DNA of 64,000 bases from Chlorokybus atmophyticus (GCA_009103225.1 RHPI01002503.1:180391-244390), one strand, 5' to 3'; positions 1,235 through 12,319 are shown, numbered from the stretch's first letter. Numbers and translations are program-made. The notes: generated by a model from the letters alone, not told the origin.

Positions 1235-1476
1235 NNNNNNNNNNNNNNNNNNNNNNNNNNNNNNNNNNNNNNNNNNNNNNNNNNNNNNNNNNNNNNNNNN
1301 NNNNNNNNNNNNNNNNNNNNNNNNNNNNNNNNNNNNNNNNNNNNNNNNNNNNNNNNNNNNNNNNNNNNNNNNNNNNNNNNNNNNNNNNNNNNNNNNNNNN
1401 NNNNNNNNNNNNNNNNNNNNNNNNNNNNNNNNNNNNNNNNNNNNNNNNNNNNNNNNNNNNNNNNNNNNNNNNNNNN
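1235..1476. other. Assembly gap (run of N)
   Basis: Continuous N run between ...ttcttgaatttttg and gggagtctt... Confidence 0.99.
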
Positions 1477-1877: not shown

Positions 1878-2310
1878 TTACATGATGAGAGTGCGTTAGG
1901 CTGCCAGGGCGGGTCCAGCGCAATCAGCTAGCCCTCACGTCGAAGGCCCAGGCCCACCCGCGACTGCACTCGTCGTATCCACGTCAGCATCATAAGCAAA
2001 AGCGGCGCAAGGCAGGTGGCGGCAACGGCGGCGGCGCTGCAGCGGCTTGAAATGCTGGTGGCACCGGCTTCAAGTCAACCCACCTAGTGGACGACGTGAA
2101 GCTGCGTCGCAAGCTGAAGTAAGCTTAGCAGCAGGGGCCTGCGCCCGTAGTGAAAACAGCAGCGCATGCGACGGGCGCCGTCATGCGAGGCGCAGGCGGC
2201 TGGGTGAGCAATCAAACAGTGAGAAAGGAGCATTTGTTCACGCTGTTTGCTTCAGCTAGTCGAGCGCAATCGGTAGAGTGAAAGGCTGTTTGGCATGGTG
2301 TGTTGCCGCT

Positions 2311-5300
2311 ATGACTACTGTGTGCATGCGTTCGCTGTGCGTTGCGCTAGGCGCGCACATAGCCTTGTTATCCAGAGCAGAAGAATTGCACCAGCAAACG
2401 CGTATAGGCGTCAAGCCCCCAGCTGTTGCATGCATAGTGTCGATCCCCGTTGATGCTTAAAGCTCCTTGCTTTGAGCGCATCGACGGGGATTGAGACAAT
2501 GCATGCAACACCCCGCAGGGGTTGACGCCTTTATGCACTTGTTGGTGCAATCTCACAGCCCGACAGTTTGCTTTGGTGTATTTAAGCAATGAGCATTTTA
2601 CTTGATGGCCAATGCCACAAGCCAATGTACAAGTCTGTTTGTCCCCATCGTCCCATGCATGCACATTGTGAAGATTAATCAAGCTTGATTGCCTTTTCAG
2701 GCGTGCGTTGTGCTTGCCGTCGTTGTCTGGGCTGCAGCATATGCTGAGGCGCATGCAGCTGAAAGGTAAACTCATGTGATGTAATGCATGCCACAATGGA
2801 AACACAGCTTTACATCAAGTGCAGCGACACAAAGTTGTTGTGGTCTTGAACACATCATGCAGTATGACTACTTTTGAGAATGCAACTCTGCGATGCAGCA
2901 CGGTTTGCAGCGGCTTGCAAGCCAAAACCGCTGTTCCGGCCTTCAATGGAGATCACGCACCCGGGCGTTGCGCAATGTATGGCATCTGCGGTGCGCGCAA
3001 AGATGGCAAACCTCTCAACTGCCCCAACAGCACGGTTGCTGTCACGGTAAATGCCGTGTCCTTCACATGTATTGGATCTGCACGCACACAGACAAAGACA
3101 CACGCCCACTTGCAGACGCAGACACACGTGCACGCGCATGCGCATGCACACACGCACAGGCACGCATGCACATGTGCGGCCAACGCTCGTATGTGCATGT
3201 GCACACGCATATGCATGCTCATATACTGAGACACATACAAGGTGTGGGCGAATCGCTGGCGAGCTTGCACCCTCCCCCGTGGTGGTCATCGAGTTGTGTG
3301 CTCGCATTATGCTCACAAGTTTCTTTGTCTGTGTCACACAGCCAGATGAGGAGTTTTCCAAGCAGGTCCAAGGGCTGTGTCCCACTTTCACAGGGGACAT
3401 ATGCTGCAGCAAGGAGCAATTTGATGTCTTGAGGAATCAGGTCAAACAGGTGAGCTGCTTTGGTTGCAAAGCGCGAGGCGAATGCATGGCATGTGGTTGT
3501 GGTAACGTGAATGCTTGTTTGTTATATTGTGCAGGCAACGGCTTTTCTCAGTGGCTGTCCTGCTTGCAACCGCAACTTCCTCAACTTCTTCTGCAACCTG
3601 GCCTGCTCTCCTGATCAGTCCTTGTTCATAAATGTCAGTCGGACAGCATTGGTAAGTGCTCCTTAAGAGGTTGTAGAGCGTGTGTGTGCGCACGCGCATG
3701 TGTTTATGTGTTGCACTTAACGCGTGGTGTTGCAGGCGCCGTCCAACAATCGGACAAGTGTGGTGGCGTTGGACTTCTACGTGGCAGAGCACTTTGGCAC
3801 AGAGTTCTACAAGTCCTGTCAGGACGTCAAGTTTGGCTCCATGAACACGCGCGCCCTGGACTTCATCGGTGGCGGGGCGACCGACTATCCATGTAAGGAG
3901 ACAACAGTCCTGGTCGGCATTGGCACATATCCAGCACGTCTCACGTGCATTCATCGTGCATGTGTGTCATTCAGCGTGGTTCGAGTTTTTGGGTACGGAA
4001 GCTCTGGACGGGCAGCCCGGCGCTCCATGCACTATCAACTTCCCTTCTGAGGTAAACAGTCAAGCATAAGTAGGTGGATGCCATTATTGGCGAGCATGCA
4101 TACCACTCCGTTTGTATCGATTGGATCTGCACACAGGCAAGTGTTCCTGAGGGCATGAAAGCCTTTGATCTTCCGGTGGTTCCATGCGAAGGCCCTTCAA
4201 TGCAGTGCTCCTGCGGGGACTGCCCCGCGGCCATCGGCTGCAGCGCGCCCCCGCCACCCGCACCTCCCAAACCTCCCAGACACATCCTGGGGGTATTGTC
4301 ACCATCATTACGTCATGCTAAGTTCTCCATCATCCCTGACTGGCCTGCGTTGTTTCAGTTACGACCGCTGGCGTTCTGGATGCTGCTGCTTTATTTCCTC
4401 ATCATTGTCGCGGTGGTGTGGGTTTACGCGCACCAAGTGCGCGTGGTCGAGCGGGCGCTGCACGATGGCGACGGGGCAGCCACGGAGCCTCTGCTGTCAT
4501 CCAAGAGGACACCATCGTCATCGCACACGGGAGGCTCGCACCGCAAGTCCCGAGCCGATTATGCCAAGCCGATGGTGAGATCAGAGGTTGCCCTTACTTT
4601 GCTATGCTCACGTATTAGGACTTGGTGGCTCGTGTTGTTCACCACTGCGTGCATGGCAGGCTGTACCATCAGGTTGGCTGCAAAGCCATCTTCACAAGAG
4701 TTTCAAGCTCCTGGGTTCTGCTATCGCTGAGCACCCCGCAGTTAGCCTGCTTGCCTGTCTTGCTGTTGCCGGACTTTTCAGCCTTGGGTTGCTGCGCTTC
4801 CAGGTGGACACGGATCCTGCAAAGGTACCAACTTCGCATGTCAATCTCACATGAAGTCATTGCATTGATATCATGTTGTTGGCTTGTCTCAGCTTTGGGT
4901 GAGCCCCAAGTACCAATCAGCCAAGGACAAGGCTTTCTTCGACCAGCACTTTGGCGCTTTCTACCGCATTGAGCAGGTACGTCACAATTCGCAATAACAT
5001 GTCAGTAAGTATTGTAGAGTTGAACCAGATGGTGAGATGCTCCACGCGCCAGCTTATCCTGGATTCCTGTCTTTGCAGCTGATCATTTCCACCAAGGCCA
5101 CAGCAGGGTCCGAGCAGCCGCCGATCGTCACCGATGACAACTTGCAGCTGATGTTTGACATCCAGAAAAAGGTTGCTAGCATGCTTTGATGGCTCTTCCA
5201 TGCAGCGAAGAGCGCGCCAAGTGCTTTGAGCACTCTCCGCAGTCCTGCCTTCTTGCCTCACAACAAACACATTGCCTCTAGTACGACGTCATAAGTTGCC

Positions 5301-8300
5301 TGGCTGCAGGTGGATGCTGTCGCGGCCAACGTGTCAGGATCGGCTGTGAGACTGCAGGACGTCTGCTTCAAGCCTATGGGGGATGCCTGCGCGACCGAGA
5401 GCATCTTACAGGTGCGCATACATGCATGTATGTGTTCGAGTGCATTGAGGTCACGTAAGCTGTTACTGTTACTCAAGTGCATTGCACTGTGCAGTACTGG
5501 CAACTGAGCGAAGAGAAGTTGTTTGAGTACGGCGGCGCAGAGCATGCAGAGTTCTGCTTTCAGGTAAGAGTTATTGCAAGCCATACCAAACTCCAACCAG
5601 CTGCCAATCTCATGTTTCCTGTACACCGTGCCACCAGCACTACTCGTCTTCGGAGATGTGTCTCAGCAAATTCAAGGCTCCCATTGAGCCCTCTGTAGTG
5701 CTCGGTGGCTTCAATGCAACCGAATATACCATGGTGAGCGGCGTTAGATCATGTGCATGGATGCGTGCTCGTGTGTGCGCGTGCTTGTGTATGTGTGCCG
5801 TTGTGAAGAACAGGATTGGCTGCGAATAATGGTTTGTGCTTACGACTTGGTCACACTTTTTTCAGGCAACTGCATTTGTAGTGACGTTTGCTGTCGACAG
5901 TTCGCCCAGCAACCAGGAAGCGGCGCTCGCGTGGGAGGAGGCATTCCTCCGGGTGGTTGAGGTACAGCACTCTGTTCACATGCTTGCGGCAAGTGCAGCA
6001 GAGTAGCCACATGCAGACTGTGTGTGAGGACGAATCCAACAACAATGACATCTGTTTTGTTGTTGCCGCATAGGCTGAGCTTCAGCCGCTGTGCGATAAG
6101 CATGGGCTGCGATTGTCGTACTCGACAGAGCGCTCTGTGTCCGACGAGCTGCAGCGCGAAAGCGGCATGGATGTTATTACCGTTGCGGTCAGCTACCTTG
6201 TCATGTTTGTGTACATGGCAATTGCTCTCGGGCGAATGACTGCCGACCCCACCGAAGCGTTCATCCAGTCAAAGGTATCCAAAATCAAAGGTCGCGCAGC
6301 TTGTAATTTCAAACTGTGCAAAGTTCTTGTCGATATCATCGGCGACCACCTCACTCACATACAAGCAGCTGTGATTGCCTGAAGCATGCCCACTTATGGT
6401 TGTTTCCTTCTGTGTTGTGCTTCAACCTGCAGGCTCTGCTCGGTCTGGGGGGCGTCGCACTGGTGTTGATTTCAGTCACCGCTGCAATCGGTGTCTGCAG
6501 TGCCGTTGGCATTCACTCAACACTCATCATTGTTGAAGTCATTCCTTTCTTGGTCCTGGCGGTACGCACTTTGTGACAGAAGAGCAGCAATCTTACGTAT
6601 TGCACAAACAGGCATCGTCATGCATGCATGCATGCTTACAGCCTTCGCGGTGCAGGTCGGCGTGGACAACATGGTCATTCTTGTGCATACGTTGAAGCGT
6701 CTCGATCCTAGGCAACCGCTTGAGGAACGCATTGGAGATGCGCTTGCAGCTGCGGCACCGTCCATCACGCTCGCAAGCCTTGCAGAGACCGTTGCTTTTG
6801 CCATGGGCACTCTGACACCGGTCCCTGCCGTGCATGTGTTCTCGCTGTTTGCAGGTGAAGCTAAAGCACTCAGCTGTGTCTATTGCACTCTGCTGTTGCT
6901 GTCCAGCGTGAACAGCGTTGCCGTCTTGCAACTGTTAGCGGCAACACGCGGTCACGCTCACGCGCGCGCTCACATACACGCATGGTTGTGTGCTCCGTAC
7001 AGGCATTAATCTGGGCTATGCATGCAGCGGTTGCGGTTTTCTTCAACTACTTGCTGCAAGTCACGGCATTCGTTGCCATGATGGCAATGGACTTCCGCCG
7101 GGCAGAGGAGCACCGAGTGGATTGCCTCCCGTGGGTACAAACAAGGCCGCGCTACCAGTACCACGCAACAGACCGAGGTATGATCTGCAGGTTCACAATA
7201 TGTGAGGTAGCTTTGCAATGATGTAACAACGTCAGTGTACAACACCCTCGTGTGCCTAGGTGCGTCGCTGCTGCACAAGCCCCGCCGCATGCTCGTCAAC
7301 GCATACATGGAGGACATACACGTGCCATTTCTCGCACGCAAGGGTGTCAAGGCGTTCGTAGTCATTGTATTTGCGGGCATGCTGCTCTTCAGCATTGCCT
7401 CTTTACCGTTGGTGAAGCCGGGCCTGGATCAGCGCGTCGCCCTGCCACGCGACTCCTACCTTCAGGGGTACTTCACGGACATCACAGAGTACCTTCGTGT
7501 GGGACCGCCGCTCTACTTCATGCTGAAAGACTTCGACTATACCAGCGAGCAGCGGGTAGATTCGGTCTGCGGCATTGGCGGTTGTCATCCAGATTCACTG
7601 GTCAACGAGGTGGTCATTATCTGTTGCTTACAACTTACCTTCATAGTAGTTGCTGTGAGAAAACCCTTACACATACTGCATGCTGTGGAGCACCAATTTG
7701 AGCTATCTGTTGGTCAAAGCAAGGCAGGTTGCTTACCAGCATGTATCATTGTCGTGCAGCCGCAGCGCCAACCCTTACATGTGACTCTTCTGTCTCTCAT
7801 CACAGATTGCCAAGGCGGCGCTCGCTCCAGCATCCACACGCATCGCACGGCCAGCGGCGTCCTGGCTCGACGACTTCCTGACGTGGATATCGCCGGACGC
7901 GTTCGGCTGCTGCCGCCAGTTCCCCAACGGCACGTACTGCCCGCCGGACGACCAGCCGCCCTGCTGCCCGGACCCTGAAGTGCCCTGCGAGAGCTTTGAT
8001 ATCTGCAAAGACTGCACTGTGGTGAGGACTCGCTGCAGGTTGTTGTGTTGTACACAAAAAGGTCTTGTTACAGGCCAATGACACTGTATAACCGCACACT
8101 TGATCTTGGACTTGGTCACAGTCACCGCGCATTAAGTTGGTCATGCGGTGTCATGTGCATGAGGTGCTTTGCGTTACTTGGAGGTACTTAACAATGTGCA
8201 ATGCTGTTGTGCAGTGCTTCACAGCATCGGAACTGCAACATGGGCGTCCAAGCCCAGAACAGTTCAGAGAGAAGCTTCCATGGTTCCTGATGGCCATCCC

Positions 8301-10189
8301 ATCCGCAGACTGTGCAAAGGGCGGTTACGGCGCATACAGCCAAAGCCTTGATCTAACTGGTAGGAACACTGCAAGTCACAAAACTGAGACACCCGTACTT
8401 GCATGTATCTGCCAAAGTGCTGTAATGAAACGTAACTGTTGTTGTGTGTACAGGGTTTGACAGCGGGGTAATTGCTGCGTCCAACTTCAGGACATACCAT
8501 ACGGCTTTGAGGACGCAGGATGACTTCATTGAGGGCTTGCGCACTTCGCGCAGTTTTGCGCAGCAACAAAGCGCGCACGTGGGCATGGAAGTGTTCCCGT
8601 ACTCCATCTTCCACCAGTTCTTTGAGCAGTACTTGACAATCGGTTACGACTCAGCCGTCAACCTCGCGACCGTCATCGGCGCAGTGTTTCTTGTATGCGC
8701 CGTGTTCACGTACAGCTTGTGGTCGGCGTCCGTCATCATGTTCGTCATAACCATGGTCGTCGTCGACATGCTTGGCGTGATGCGTCTGTGGGGCATCGAG
8801 CTCAACGCCGTCTCAATGGTCAACCTGGTGATGTCTGTCGGCATTGCTGTAGAGTTTTGCGTCCACATCACGCACGCGTTCGTGCACTCTCCCGGCAAAA
8901 CTCGCTCCGCACGAGCGTCGCATGCCGTCTCCACCATGGGAGCCTCTGTCTTCAGCGGCATCACATTGACAAAGTTTGCGGGCGTCAGCGTGCTGTATTT
9001 TGCTCGATCTGAGATATTTGAGGTAAGGAGGGCATGACATGCAGTACAAACTTTGGACTCGTTTGTTGCTATGCGCACAGAAGCACGACAATGACACCTT
9101 GGCCTGCCAGGTGTACTACTTCCGCATGTACATCAGCCTGGTTGTGCTTGGCGCGCTTCACGGGTTGGTCTTCCTGCCGGTAAGCACCGACCTGATTAAA
9201 TCAAGTGTTCCTGTTGTTGGTGTTAACGCGTTTGCCAAGTCTTTGTGCATACAAAGCGTGTGCAAGTGTGCAAGTGTGCAAGCAAGTATCTATCGTTGAG
9301 ACTCTCAACAGATACAGATAACAGGTACAGATTGAATAGCGACTCAAATATTGCCTTGCAGGTGCTGCTGAGCCTAGTTGGCCCTCCTTCAGCCACACGC
9401 AAAGGGAGTGCGGGCGCGCCGACACTCGAGGACTTGGGCATTGACGCGTGCGAGGACTGTGCCTCCAGCGACGATGACGACAACGCCGGAGACTTCTCGC
9501 AGGCGCTGCCGCTGCCGGAGGACGCACTTGAAGCAGAGGCGGACTTTGCCTCGGCCGTGCCGCTGGAGGACTCTCCGCTGCCGGTGACAAGGACAGTACC
9601 TTTTCTGCAAGATGGTGAGGCGGGTGGTGCTGATGGTGCCGGCAGCGGGTCTAAAGGCGGTGTCGCGGGTAACGGACAAGCGGCTAACGGCAGCCCGCGG
9701 TGTCATGTGTGCCGGCTTCGGGGGCAGGAGGTCGTTCTGGATCCGTGCGAACACGTTGCCACGTGCGCTGCGTGCGGCAAGAGGTGAGGTGTGTACCCTG
9801 ACCATGGCATGTTTCAAGAGGTTGAGTGATTGTCAATCTGTAGCACTTGAGTGAGCACTGCACCGCAATGAGATGCCCTGCAGTGCTTCCTGTCATCGAG
9901 CCATTGACACATCAAATAAGCAGCAGCTACTCGAGTGCTGTATGTCAGCCAGCCTTGATAGTCCCAAAGCAGCTTTAGGATGTCATTTCATAGACCAAGT
10001 CTGGGTCTTTGTGGGGCCCATCTGAGCCGAGGAGGCAGTAGGCAATTGTCGAGTAATGTAAGCATTAACCAGGGTTGTGTTTGCACCAGGTTACTGGATG
10101 CTAAGGCAGGGTGCCCCAGATGTCGAGTTGCTGTGCAGCGAATACATCCGTTCAGTAGAAAGGCTCTCTTTGCCAAGACAGGAAGTTGA
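2311..10189 (+). CDS. NPC1: Niemann-Pick C1-like sterol transporter with C-terminal C3HC4 RING domain (multi-exon; true start uncertain, first securely recognised exon about 2910-3047)
   Basis: The Cys-rich N-terminal domain reads [24 protein letters not shown] and [17 protein letters not shown]. The middle domain reads FYRIEQLI and YWQLSEEK. The sterol-sensing domain reads [14 protein letters not shown] and [12 protein letters not shown]. The C-terminal membrane region reads [61 protein letters not shown] and [17 protein letters not shown]. The frame then continues through an acidic linker into a RING; stop TGA at 10187-10189. Confidence 0.95.
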
Positions 10190-10835
10190 TGTGTGATGTT
10201 GTAGAGCTAGTGATGCTGCGTTGGTCATGATGCATGCAGCGTGTAGTAGTCACACAATTTGTTGCGCCGGCCGTAATGCATGTTGAAAATCTCACACGGG
10301 TCATTCTGTTGCGGATTGTTTGTACATTGTACATTGTGGAGGGTATGTGACGGCTTGCAAAGTGCATACTCCGTGCAGCCCTACAAACAAGCCAAAGGTG
10401 GCTCTCGACAAGGCTGGCAAAGTGGGTTTGGGTACTGTTACAGTTCACACTGCCGCATGTACCATAGAAAAACATACGACTGACAGCCCTTGTTGCCTCT
10501 ACTGGGAAAATGTAATAGCTCTTCCAAACCGTGGCAATTAAGTGCTCCTGGAGACAGCAAAACTAGCAGCACTGCTATGCTGCTTCAGTTGCAATATGGC
10601 TTTGTGCTGCACACTATTGCTGATTGTGATTATGATGCGGACAGCTCTAAGCTCAGTTGCACAGTTCATCCCAACTTGCTCGCAGGCACAAGGTTACTGG
10701 CATGCAGCCGCAACATACAGCTGGCTCATAATCTGCACATTCTAACACGCAACTGGTGTCCCCGCCATGGTTGACAAGAAGGCCATGAGAAGTTTCAGGT
10801 TGTACAGCATGCGGTGAATAATAAGGTTAAAGCAG

Positions 10836-11915
10836 TTAGGGAAACACCAGGTTGGAGTGCAGCTCCTCCACTTCTTTTGACAGCTCCGTCAGCTCGGTCG
10901 AAAACTTGGCCTGGTCCTCTTTTGTTACCAAGTCAGGCTTTAAAGGCGCGGGGAGGATGAGCATGCAACTGGTCGGCCTTTTGGTTGCACCCGCTGTGCC
11001 CAGATCCTGTAGAAGAAGAACTCAGTAGCGGTTGAGCTCAACATATGGGAGCAGTAGTGCAAGACACATATATGACTGACGGACACACAGATCAAAATAC
11101 AACCATACATAACGACACGGACACGTTGTACGCGCCTCTTTGGATGGTACATAGATGTATGGCACATCCAACTCCTCGCAAAGGATAGGTAAGTGGGTGA
11201 TGACATCGATAGGTGAAATGTCGCCTGCGATAATGCACAGCCTGGCCCAAAAAACAGCACAATCAAGTCAAAGTCAGCTCGGTAGTAAGTCACTGCGCAC
11301 TGCATTGGAGCTGTGCTGAGCATCAGAAGGAGAAGCAACAAACACACCCTTTCTGGCCTTTTCGCAGCGCTTTCACAACCTCTTTCACTCCGCGCTTCAG
11401 CTGCTTCTGCTTGGCCGCTTCAAAATAGAACCAAACAATGTCAGCACACCGATGATACTGTGGACACAAAGCCTAGTGGCATAGTGTGGTATAGCACAGC
11501 GATGCTTCTGCGACTTATGAAACTAACTAACGCATCATACTCGCTTACCAAAGAGGCCAATGCAACAGTCAGCAGGACCTCACTGTGTATGCTTTACACA
11601 CTTCTAGAATGTGTGGACATGCACAACGCCGATGGCAAGTCATCAGCAAGCTCTGCTGCGTATGACGTGCGTAGTGCTTTGCAGCAATGTGCACTACCGC
11701 GACTGACATAATGGAACGCCTAAGTGCATGCAAAGCGTCCGTGCCCATGCTCATGCCCATGCCCTGGCCTCCATACGCGCACCTTTCTTCACAATCTTGA
11801 GCGCCTTCTTGTTGAGCTTCTTGCCCGCCAGGGGCTTTGCAATTATAGACACCGCTACTCGCTTCGCCTTGTCCTTCTCCACCTCCTGCTTGCTGTTGCC
11901 GTCCTCCTCGCCCAT
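10836..11915 (-). CDS. NHP2: H/ACA ribonucleoprotein subunit 2 (L7Ae family), 4 exons
   Basis: Spliced product: [127 protein letters not shown]...VFP*. The [13 protein letters not shown] and GATKRPT motifs are typical of NHP2. Intron 3 has a GC donor. Confidence 0.95.
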
Positions 11916-11954
11916 GGCGCCGACGAAGCTTGCGCTGACACACACCGGCCCCCC

Positions 11955-11962
11955 AACCCTAA
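11955..11962 (+). promoter_or_regulatory. Possible telo-box-like element (AACCCTAA) just upstream of the NHP2 start
   Basis: aaccctaa lies about 40 bp upstream of the NHP2 ATG. Telo-boxes are known in 5' regions of plant ribosome-biogenesis genes. The motif is short and could be chance. Confidence 0.3.
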
Positions 11963-12319
11963 CAAGCCCTCAACGCCGCCGCCATGGCTTGGACTCTCTG
12001 TATTTTCTCTCCTATGCTCCAACCTTCTCTAACTCACCCAGGAGGACCACCTCCGTCTCCTGCGTGTCGCCGCCCTGCTGCTCCTGCTCCTTCTCCTTCT
12101 CCTCGACCACCGCCGCCGCCACCGCCGCTTTCACTCACTCGCGTTATGTAGAGTGCGTTAGCTACCAACTATACCGTGAAGCTAACGTGGTGCAGAGCTA
12201 ACGTTTGTGCCATGTGGTCTGGTCTGGTCTGTGGCCTGGCCTGGCCTGGCCCCGTCTGGCCTGGTGTGTTCGCTCTGCACTTCCCCTCAGGACAGGCACG
12301 GGTAGGAGGTGCCGCCGCT

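What the first reader, a model, noticed from the sequence alone, without database searches (positions are those of the whole stretch)
9362..10189. NPC1 sterol transporter fused in frame to a cytosolic C3HC4 RING: candidate sterol-sensing lysosomal/vacuolar E3 ligase
Seen in sequence: the last NPC1 exon starts at 9362 with VLLSLVGPP, close to where canonical NPC1 ends. The same uninterrupted exon continues through about 105 acidic, low-complexity residues into [29 protein letters not shown] phase-2 GT-AG intron (9784-10089) joins in frame to [18 protein letters not shown]...GS*. The resulting spacing C-x2-C-x11-C-x-H-x3-C-x2-C-x10-C-x2-C is a complete RING-HC of the zf-C3HC4_3 type (as in MGRN1, IAPs and MUL1). 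Established: the NPC1 C-terminus is cytosolic, and animal, yeast and land-plant NPC1/Ncr1 lack a RING. Known SSD+RING proteins (TRC8/RNF139, RNF145) are ER proteins with RING-H2 and no NPC1 luminal domains. Inference: this alga may couple lysosomal sterol export or sensing directly to ubiquitination, an architecture I do not recall being described.
Basis: partly seen in the sequence, partly recalled or inferred. Interest (0 to 1): 0.88.

Follow-up and report, generated by a model that had tools for sequence, protein, structure and literature searches.

The report
NPC1 sterol transporter with built-in RING
In the alga Chlorokybus, the lysosomal-type sterol transporter NPC1 carries a complete, expressed ubiquitin-ligase (RING) domain on its cytosolic tail; its distant sister alga Mesostigma has the same fusion, no other NPC1 examined does, and the public gene model cuts the domain short.

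Summary

- **Gene:** window 2183-10189 (+) encodes a full NPC1. It is collinear with human NPC1 residues 24-1260 (E 9e-235).
- **Tail exon:** exon 9362-9783 runs without a break from the end of the last membrane helix, through a 104-residue acidic linker, into the first six zinc ligands of a RING.
- **Intron:** the GT-AG intron 9784-10089 is removed in assembled transcripts from two independent studies. One 4607-nt contig carries the transporter exons from at least 4750 on, plus the RING.
- **Domain call:** the spliced RING scores 42 bits on Pfam zf-C3HC4_3 (cut-off 27).
- **Public annotation:** the genome is Chlorokybus (JGI Chlat1). Its model Chrsp44S05762 reads into the intron, stops 33 residues early and loses the last zinc pair.
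- **Conservation:** Mesostigma viride NPC1 (Mv19167) has the same C-terminal RING with identical ligand spacing.
- **Range:** about 390 other NPC1 homologues and 32 metagenome loci show no RING. These include Klebsormidium, Chara, land plants, chlorophytes, fungi and animals.
- **Literature:** the held papers do not describe this architecture.

E3 activity, location in the cell and any link to sterols are inferred, not tested. It is a new variant of a known kind, of moderate interest. The scan noted this same stretch once before, in an overlapping window (s1-171939).

The parts
2183..10189 (+). Coding region of the NPC1-RING gene: 27 coding exons, 26 GT-AG introns, 1440 aa. The mRNA is about 4.6 kb.
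   Evidence: The public model P0164 maps exactly onto the window. Of the 17 introns from 4825 on, 15 are listed joints in RNA contigs. Introns 5962-6073 and 6275-6432 were placed by reading frame and agree with P0164. The nine introns before 4750 rest on the public model only.
2963..4292 (+). NPC1 N-terminal (sterol-binding) luminal domain, residues 51-283, interrupted by introns. A signal-peptide-like hydrophobic stretch lies at residues 4-22.
   Evidence: Pfam PF16414 scores 223.6 bits on P0164.
6263..7140 (+). Sterol-sensing domain, residues 654-804, interrupted by introns. It contains the TM4 motif AVGVDNMV.
   Evidence: Pfam PF12349 scores 172.3 bits and PF02460 111.9 bits.
8454..9179 (+). 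Two exons (8454-9022 and 9111-9179) encoding the C-terminal transmembrane bundle up to TM13. They contain the TM10 motif SVGIAVEF.
   Evidence: RNA joints. Alignment to human NPC1 residues 1078-1260, E 2e-61.
9362..9783 (+). Tail exon. It holds the end of TM13 (VLLSLVGPP, 9362-9388), the acidic low-complexity linker (9389-9700) and the first six zinc ligands of the RING (9701-9783).
   Evidence: One uninterrupted exon in the RNA contigs of X1 and X2. Translation. A partial PF13920 hit on this exon alone.
9784..10089 (+). Phase-2 GT-AG intron inside the RING. If it is retained, TGA at 9785-9787 ends the protein after GKR, which is where the public model ends.
   Evidence: The joint 9781>10088 (cut +2) is seen in X1, X2 and X4. 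P0164 ends at ...CAACGKR.
10090..10189 (+). Last coding exon. It holds the last zinc pair, a Pro, and an Arg at the recalled 'linchpin' position (CPRCR, 10112-10126), then a 20-residue C-terminal tail and the stop at 10187-10189.
   Evidence: The RNA contigs run on for 216 nt (X1) and 213 nt (X2) past the joint.
10190..10303 (+). 3' untranslated region. The X1 transcript contig ends near 10303.
   Evidence: Positions 1-216 of X1 record 1 lie after the joint at 10088. RNA depth is zero over 10322-10520.

Best explanation
This is a genuine, expressed gene of Chlorokybus. It encodes a complete NPC1-type sterol transporter whose cytosolic C-terminus is extended by an acidic flexible linker and a RING-HC domain of the zf-C3HC4_3 type.

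Shown:
- One transcript and one reading frame.
- A RING completed by splicing.
- The same fusion in Mesostigma.

Inferred from homology: the N-terminal domain and the loops face the lumen, and the tail faces the cytosol. That places the RING where E2 enzymes are.

Inferred from sequence: the RING is probably catalytically competent. It keeps all eight zinc ligands, the hydrophobic E2-contact positions (Val in CHVC, Leu four residues after the sixth ligand, Pro in CPRC) and the Arg right after the last Cys. All of these are identical in Mesostigma.

Most likely mechanism (inferred, not tested): the tethered RING recruits an E2~ubiquitin to the membrane that holds NPC1. It then ubiquitinates NPC1 itself and/or close neighbours, and so sets the turnover or sorting of the transporter. 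This would be a built-in version of the ubiquitylation that mammalian NPC1 receives from separate ligases and that responds to sterol level. Whether the sterol state of the transporter gates the RING is open.
For: Transcript evidence:
- RNA contigs from two studies join the NPC1 exons from at least 4750 on to the tail exon and splice out 9784-10089. The splice sites were verified.
- The end of TM13, the linker and most of the RING lie in one exon. A read-through between two genes is therefore impossible.

Domain evidence:
- PF13920 scores 42.1 bits, E 7.3e-11, on the spliced RING, against 19 bits on the truncated public model.
- P0164 aligns in a single stretch, residues 52-1281, to human NPC1 residues 24-1260, E 9e-235. 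The human protein ends 18 residues later; the alga's runs on for 159 more.
- NPC1_N, MLD and SSD all score above their Pfam cut-offs.

Conservation:
- Mesostigma viride Mv19167 (P0005, 1645 aa) carries PF13920 at residues 1593-1631, behind a linker that does not align.
- The RING alignment shows all eight ligands, the spacing and E13, P18, V22, L32, L33, G38, P40, R43 invariant.
- Chlorokybus and Mesostigma belong to the clade that is sister to all other streptophytes (PMC8611356).

Closest solved RINGs: MDM4, MUL1 and CBL at E about 1e-3, and XIAP at E about 5e-3.

[quoted passage not shown]' (Ohsaki 2006) is cited in PMC3019559.
Against: - No biochemical data exist. E3 activity, substrates, location and sterol dependence are all untested.
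- The best solved match is MDM4, whose RING I recall as inactive on its own, so similarity alone does not prove catalysis.
- AlphaFold models of the RING were of low confidence (pLDDT 48 and 56), and the fold search was meaningless. The alignments had only 1-2 sequences.
- The E2-contact and 'linchpin' positions are assigned from my own knowledge of c-Cbl, cIAP and RNF4, not from a tool.
- In run X4, probably another Chlorokybus species, unspliced contigs are about as deep as spliced ones. A RING-less isoform may therefore matter.
Confidence: 0.6

Rival explanations
1. The RING does not catalyse. It serves as a pairing or docking module (as I recall for MDM4 or BARD1), for instance to dimerise NPC1 or to bind a separate active ligase or a cytosolic sterol-transfer partner.
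For: The best solved hit is MDM4 (E 0.0014), which I recall as inactive alone. C-terminal zf-C3HC4_3 RINGs, as I recall, often dimerise through the residues after the last Cys, and both algae keep a hydrophobic tail after CPxCR.
Against: The Val, Leu and Pro contact positions and the Arg after the last Cys are present and conserved between two very distant algae. By my own knowledge, inactive RINGs usually lose some of these.
Confidence: 0.15
2. The RING is active, but its real targets are other proteins, such as regulators or lipid-transfer proteins at the vacuole/lysosome surface. NPC1 would act mainly as a membrane anchor, perhaps sterol-gated, rather than as the substrate.
For: The long flexible linkers, 104 residues here and about 150 in Mesostigma, would let the RING reach neighbours. 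The Chlorokybus linker has only two Lys. TRC8 and RNF145 are SSD-bearing E3s that act on other proteins (PMC6292692, PMC5656429).
Against: Nothing here points to a partner. The Mesostigma linker is Lys-rich, which would suit self-modification.
Confidence: 0.2
3. The main product is the RING-truncated protein of the public annotation (stop at 9785-9787). The spliced form would then be a minor or non-functional isoform.
For: The public model P0164 ends at GKR. X4 has unspliced contigs at depths 101 and 80.7 beside spliced ones at 116 and 44.5.
Against: In X1 the spliced contig has depth 52 against 3 for the intron piece, and in X2 no intron contig was laid. The last exon encodes exactly the missing zinc pair in frame. 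Mesostigma has the complete RING.
Confidence: 0.04
4. It is an artefact: a misassembly, or a chimeric gene model joining NPC1 to a neighbouring RING gene.
For: None found.
Against: The end of TM13 and most of the RING share one exon. Transcript contigs of two studies agree with the genome without any difference. An orthologue in another genus has the same architecture. The window holds no second RING copy.
Confidence: 0.01

Closest known systems
Mesostigma viride NPC1, JGI Mesvir1 Mv19167-RA.1 (P0005)
   Same: It has the same architecture: NPC1_N, MLD and SSD, then TM13, a low-complexity linker and a C-terminal zf-C3HC4_3 RING. Ligand spacing is identical, and both have CPxCR.
   Different: It is 1645 aa. 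Its linker is Gly/Lys-rich rather than acidic and cannot be aligned. The RING core is only about 40% identical. Its gene structure could not be fetched.
Canonical NPC1 / Ncr1 / plant NPC1-like (human NPC1 structures 3JD8, 6W5R)
   Same: It is collinear from the N-terminal domain to TM13, all NPC1 Pfam domains are present, and the TM4 GVDN and TM10 GIAVEF motifs are kept.
   Different: Human NPC1 ends 18 residues after the aligned part. This protein adds 159 residues with a RING. None of about 390 other homologues has a RING.
TRC8 (RNF139) and RNF145, ER-resident E3 ligases with a sterol-sensing domain
   Same: One polypeptide combines a sterol-sensing type membrane domain with a cytosolic C-terminal RING. 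These ligases are sterol-responsive (PMC6292692, PMC5322959).
   Different: By my own knowledge they are ER proteins with a RING-H2, and they lack the NPC1 luminal domains and the two-fold RND transporter core. Here the RING is C3HC4. It is an analogy, not a family relation.
C-terminal zf-C3HC4_3 RINGs: MUL1 (plant SP1), XIAP/cIAP, MDM2/MDM4, CBL
   Same: Pfam family, ligand spacing, CPxCR, and a position at the very C-terminus. The MUL1 alignment also extends through ...CPxCRxA(V/I)xR(I/V)xP(F/L).
   Different: Similarity is weak (E about 1e-3), so no particular RING family can be named as the donor. The protein contexts are entirely different.
Patched (PTCH1) C-terminal tail
   Same: By my own knowledge, this related RND/SSD protein has a cytosolic C-terminal tail that brings in ubiquitin ligases (HECT type, through PPxY motifs) to control its own trafficking and turnover.
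   Different: There the ligase is a separate protein. Here the ligase domain is part of the transporter.

Membership tests
NPC1 (RND/Patched superfamily sterol transporter) | N-terminal NPC1_N domain, middle luminal domain and sterol-sensing domain | tested here: met
   PF16414 223.6 bits, PF22314 127.6 bits and PF12349 172.3 bits, all above their cut-offs.
NPC1 (RND/Patched superfamily sterol transporter) | Collinear with solved NPC1 over all 13 membrane helices, which implies a cytosolic C-terminus | tested here: met
   A single alignment of residues 52-1281 to human residues 24-1260, E 9e-235. The topology itself is transferred from the solved structures, not measured.
NPC1 (RND/Patched superfamily sterol transporter) | Charged motifs in TM4 (GxxxD) and TM10 (GxxxE) | tested here: met
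   AVGVDNMV and SVGIAVEF can be read in the translation. Their role is from my own knowledge.
NPC1 (RND/Patched superfamily sterol transporter) | Sterol transport and lysosomal/vacuolar location | not testable with these tools
   Needs an experiment.
RING-HC, Pfam zf-C3HC4_3 | Eight zinc ligands C3HC4 with cross-brace spacing | tested here: met
   C-x2-C-x11-C-x-H-x3-C-x2-C-x10-C-x2-C. The spacing is identical in Mesostigma.
RING-HC, Pfam zf-C3HC4_3 | Score above the Pfam gathering threshold | tested here: met
   42.1 bits against 27, E 7.3e-11, profile positions 4-48 of 49.
RING-HC, Pfam zf-C3HC4_3 | RING fold | tested here: inconclusive
   AlphaFold gave pLDDT 48.5 (single sequence) and 56.3 (two sequences). 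Foldseek found no match with E below 1.
RING-HC, Pfam zf-C3HC4_3 | Zinc binding and E2-dependent ubiquitin transfer | not testable with these tools
   The contact and 'linchpin' residues are present, but activity needs an assay.
SSD-RING E3 ligases TRC8/RNF145 | RING-H2 (C3H2C3) ligand pattern | tested here: not met
   The fifth ligand is Cys (C3HC4). The best Pfam family is zf-C3HC4_3, and zf-RING_2 scores below its cut-off at 26.1 against 27.3.
SSD-RING E3 ligases TRC8/RNF145 | Membrane domain without NPC1 luminal domains | tested here: not met
   NPC1_N and MLD are both present.

The most novel reading that the evidence does not exclude
The transporter is itself a sterol-gated ubiquitin ligase. 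Conformational changes of the sterol-sensing domain or the transport tunnel would be passed through TM13 and the tail to switch the RING on or off. Sterol flux out of the vacuole/lysosome would then be written directly into ubiquitin marks on NPC1 or on signalling and lipid-transfer partners. By the 'Rosetta stone' logic of gene fusions, it would also predict that NPC1 in other eukaryotes works with a separate RING ligase of this type.
Probability: 0.15. Interest if true: 0.85.

Novelty: new variant of a known kind. Interest (0 to 1): 0.58.

Why it matters
NPC1 is the protein mutated in Niemann-Pick type C disease, and how its abundance and activity are set by sterols and ubiquitin is only partly understood.

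A natural fusion of NPC1 to a RING has been kept in two algal lineages whose clade is sister to all other streptophytes. That is evolutionary evidence that ubiquitin ligation at the cytosolic face of NPC1 is functionally useful. It also gives a compact system in which to test the link: one polypeptide, with the ligase and a likely substrate together.

It adds a second, independent class of 'sterol-sensing domain plus RING' proteins beside TRC8 and RNF145, this time on a transporter of the late endocytic type.

On the practical side, it corrects the public Chlorokybus gene model. That model lacks the last exon and therefore hides the domain from domain-architecture searches.

Tried and rejected
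- **AlphaFold on the RING:** run on the 63-residue RING alone and on a two-sequence alignment. Both gave low confidence (pLDDT 48.5 and 56.3).
- **Foldseek on the better model:** only noise. This is not counted for or against the fold.
- **ESM Atlas with the Mesostigma tail:** only short unnamed or MMPL/Patched fragments, scores 0.75 or less.
- **Homologue search with the Mesostigma RING alone** (P0005 residues 1583-1645): only the query itself was a candidate, so it says nothing about distant fusions.
- **The look-up of encoding contigs for P0005:** not on record. The Mesostigma intron position could therefore not be compared.
- **Metagenome scan with the TM13-plus-tail alignment:** 32 NPC1 C-terminal loci, none with a RING motif downstream in the DNA held. 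L018 has a Gly-rich tail that runs off its contig.
- **Paper searches:** 'NPC1 + RING finger + algae' and 'Niemann-Pick + Chlorokybus/Mesostigma' found no description of the fusion.
- **Second RING copy or donor gene in the window:** tblastn found none.
- **Misassembly or chimeric-model idea:** considered and rejected.
- **Not done:** the full 1440-aa spliced protein was never sent as one query, because it has no single reference. Its pieces and the public 1407-aa model were used instead.

Full report
**1. Observation**

- An acceptor (…TTGCAG) ends at 9361, and the exon opens at 9362 with VLLSLVGPP.
- The frame stays open through an Ala/Gly/Asp-rich stretch. The 113 residues before the first RING Cys hold 20 Asp+Glu against 5 Lys+Arg, pI 4.05.
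- The frame then reaches [27 protein letters not shown].
- A donor GT lies at 9784 and an acceptor AG at 10088-10089.
- Joining 9783 to 10090 keeps the frame (phase 2) and reads …[35 protein letters not shown], with stop at 10187-10189.
- The ligand spacing is C-x2-C-x11-C-x-H-x3-C-x2-C-x10-C-x2-C.

Pfam confirms the domain. The tail exon alone gives a partial zf-C3HC4_3 hit (E 7.5e-5). The spliced 63 residues give 42.1 bits, E 7.3e-11, above the 27-bit cut-off and covering profile positions 4-48 of 49.

**2. Transcript evidence**

Two runs from different studies hold the stretch: X1 from 2021 and X2 from 2013. I laid their contigs on 4750-10700.
- X1 has one 4607-nt contig at depth 52.
- X2 has contigs of 1449 and 2246 nt at depths 9 and 26.
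- They match the genome with no differences.
- They skip 15 listed introns, each with GT..AG ends once the ambiguous bases are shifted.
- Among the listed joints are 9180-9361, the intron before the tail exon, and 9784-10089, the intron inside the RING.
- The contigs continue 213-216 nt past that joint, to about 10303. RNA depth is zero over 10322-10520.

Because these contigs skip so many introns exactly, they are spliced mRNA and not contaminating DNA.

Unspliced signal in X1 is one 236-nt contig inside the intron, at depth 3. In X2 the depth in the bins that span the intron fits the exon parts alone.

The end of TM13, the linker and six of the eight RING ligands sit in one exon. The fusion therefore cannot be read-through between two genes.

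**3. The whole gene**

Pieces of the upstream frames hit NPC1_N and the sterol-sensing domain.

A search with the exon 8456-9022, followed by a search with the best long-tailed hit, brought up the genome's own public model: JGI Chlat1 Chrsp44S05762 (P0164, 1407 aa). It is identical to my RNA-guided model. This identifies the genome as the sequenced Chlorokybus. The strain is now called C. melkonianii CCAC 0220 (PMC8611356).

Mapping P0164 gives ATG at 2183 and 26 GT-AG introns.

P0164 carries NPC1_N (223.6 bits), the middle luminal domain (127.6 bits) and the sterol-sensing domain (172.3 bits). It aligns in one stretch, residues 52-1281, to human NPC1 residues 24-1260, E 9e-235. Human NPC1 then has 18 more residues; the algal protein has 159 more.

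The charged TM4 and TM10 motifs (GVDN, GIAVEF) are present. The transporter part looks intact.

By homology with the solved structures, the tail is cytosolic.

**4. The public model is truncated**

P0164 ends at …CAACGKR. The annotation ran through the donor into TGA at 9785-9787.
- The truncated RING scores only 19 bits.
- The database's precomputed Pfam list for P0164 has no RING.
- The RNA-supported protein has 1440 residues.

**5. Relatives**

Among the 150 nearest cluster representatives to the C-terminal membrane exon, a RING pattern occurs in one protein, P0005. This is Mesostigma viride Mv19167-RA.1, 1645 aa, with PF13920 on record and confirmed here at 42.7 bits.
- Its tail begins like the Chlorokybus one (…[17 protein letters not shown]…).
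- It runs through about 150 Gly/Lys-rich residues that do not align.
- It ends in CLNCVDGPRECRIQPCGHVCVCMPCAQQLLAEFRGCPQCR….

In the alignment of the two RINGs, all eight ligands, the spacing and E13, P18, V22, L32, L33, G38, P40, R43 and A45 are invariant.

Chlorokybus, Mesostigma and Spirotaenia form the sister group of all other streptophytes (PMC8611356). The fusion therefore predates the split of these two very different algae, and its RING, though not the linker, has been kept.

**6. How far the fusion reaches**

None of the other proteins listed carries PF13920.
- 119 further NPC1 homologues were ranked on the Mesostigma C-terminal region. They include Marchantia, Coccomyxa, Chlorella, Micractinium, Myrmecia, Scenedesmus, fungi and animals.
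- 119 were ranked on the whole Chlorokybus protein. They include Klebsormidium, Chara, mosses, liverworts, Selaginella and seed plants.
- A RING pattern search over the 265 proteins fetched by that point found only P0005.
- 32 metagenome loci that encode an NPC1 C-terminus have no RING motif downstream.

These censuses are limited. Only the best 120 hits are listed per search, relatives must share short words with the query, and introns are present in the metagenome DNA. They show that the fusion is rare. They do not show that it is unique to this clade.

The simplest history is a gain in the common ancestor of Mesostigma and Chlorokybus. An older origin with later loss is not excluded.

**7. 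Within Chlorokybus**

Run X4 comes from the same 2021 study as X1 and holds almost none of the gene at 95% likeness or more. It is probably one of the other species sequenced in that study, which diverged 24-76 Ma ago (PMC8611356); this is an inference, because the run ids are coded.

X4 still has contigs identical to 9758-9797 and 10088-10116.
- Spliced contigs have depths 116 and 44.5.
- Unspliced contigs have depths 101 and 80.7.
- The intron sequence departs from the window after 9797.

This fits constraint on the RING-coding exons. It also raises the possibility that intron retention, which removes the last zinc pair, is more than noise in some species or conditions.

**8. How it most likely works**

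Shown: a full transporter with a complete RING on a long flexible tail, transcribed as one mRNA and conserved in a second genus.

Inferred from established knowledge of RING E3s (c-Cbl, cIAP/XIAP, RNF4; my own recall):
- The Val between the first two Cys, the Leu four residues after the sixth ligand and the Pro after the seventh occupy the E2-contact positions.
- The Arg directly after the eighth ligand is the 'linchpin' that primes E2~ubiquitin.
- All of these are present and invariant between the two algae.

The nearest solved RINGs are MDM4, MUL1 and CBL at E about 1e-3, and XIAP at E about 5e-3.

I therefore read the tail as a probably active, membrane-tethered E3 module facing the cytosol. 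The most likely use is ubiquitination of NPC1 itself or of close neighbours, controlling turnover or sorting of the transporter.

There is precedent in trans. Mammalian NPC1 is ubiquitylated more when cholesterol is depleted (Ohsaki et al. 2006, cited in PMC3019559). By my own knowledge, the related Patched recruits HECT ligases through its C-terminal tail. TRC8 and RNF145 combine a sterol-sensing domain with a RING in the ER (PMC6292692, PMC5322959).

Still open: whether the sterol state gates the RING, which membrane the protein sits in, and which E2 it uses.

**9. Comparison and novelty**

It is a member of the NPC1 family and of the zf-C3HC4_3 RING family. All sequence-level criteria were met.

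It is not a member of the TRC8/RNF145 family. The RING type is wrong (C3HC4, not RING-H2) and the NPC1 luminal domains are present.

I found no paper that describes an NPC1-RING protein. The Mesostigma protein sits in public proteome sets with the domain detectable but not remarked on. The Chlorokybus one is hidden by the truncated model.

I rate it a new variant of a known kind. It is a real, conserved and unusual domain architecture with a plausible and testable function. However, RING domains are promiscuous fusion partners and the range is narrow, so interest is moderate to good (0.58).

**10. What did not work**

- AlphaFold with 1-2 sequences gave low-confidence models, and Foldseek gave noise.
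- The ESM Atlas gave nothing useful.
- The RING-only homologue search had no candidates besides the query.
- The Mesostigma gene could not be fetched.
- The 1440-aa spliced protein was not submitted as a single query, because it has no single reference.

Noticed in passing
window 9784-9787 and 10090-10189: The public Chlorokybus gene model (JGI Chlat1 Chrsp44S05762, P0164, 1407 aa) reads through the donor at 9784 into TGA 9785-9787. It misses the last coding exon, so it is 33 residues short and the RING is truncated below the Pfam cut-off.
   Followed up: yes
window 9758-10116 (run X4): A run of the same 2021 study, probably another Chlorokybus species, has both spliced contigs (depths 116 and 44.5) and unspliced contigs (depths 101 and 80.7) over the RING junction. 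Its intron differs from the window after 9797. Intron retention would give a RING-less protein, so regulated retention is conceivable.
   Followed up: partly
window 1235-1476: An assembly gap (run of N), about 700 bases upstream of the NPC1 start codon.
   Followed up: no
window about 10520-12000, minus strand: A convergent neighbour gene of the L7Ae/NHP2 type (Pfam PF01248 on 11323-11469:-). RNA depth over 10521-10700 is very high (626 in X1). Its 3' end lies about 200 bases from the NPC1 3' end.
   Followed up: partly
L018:3001-3398 (metagenome contig VFQN01023191.1): An environmental NPC1 C-terminus in which TM13 is followed by a Gly/Glu-rich tail of more than 60 residues that runs off the contig end. 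It could be another long-tailed NPC1. No RING is visible in the 230 bases held.
   Followed up: no
P0180, P0253, P0258 (database proteins): Other NPC1 proteins in the database carry extra Pfam domains: protein kinase in Apophysomyces and EF-hands in Ixodes. These are either real add-ons or merged gene models.
   Followed up: no
window 3047-3341: The third intron of the NPC1 gene holds a CA/CG-rich simple-sequence stretch, which translates as HAHAHAHTH-like runs in the ORF list.
   Followed up: no
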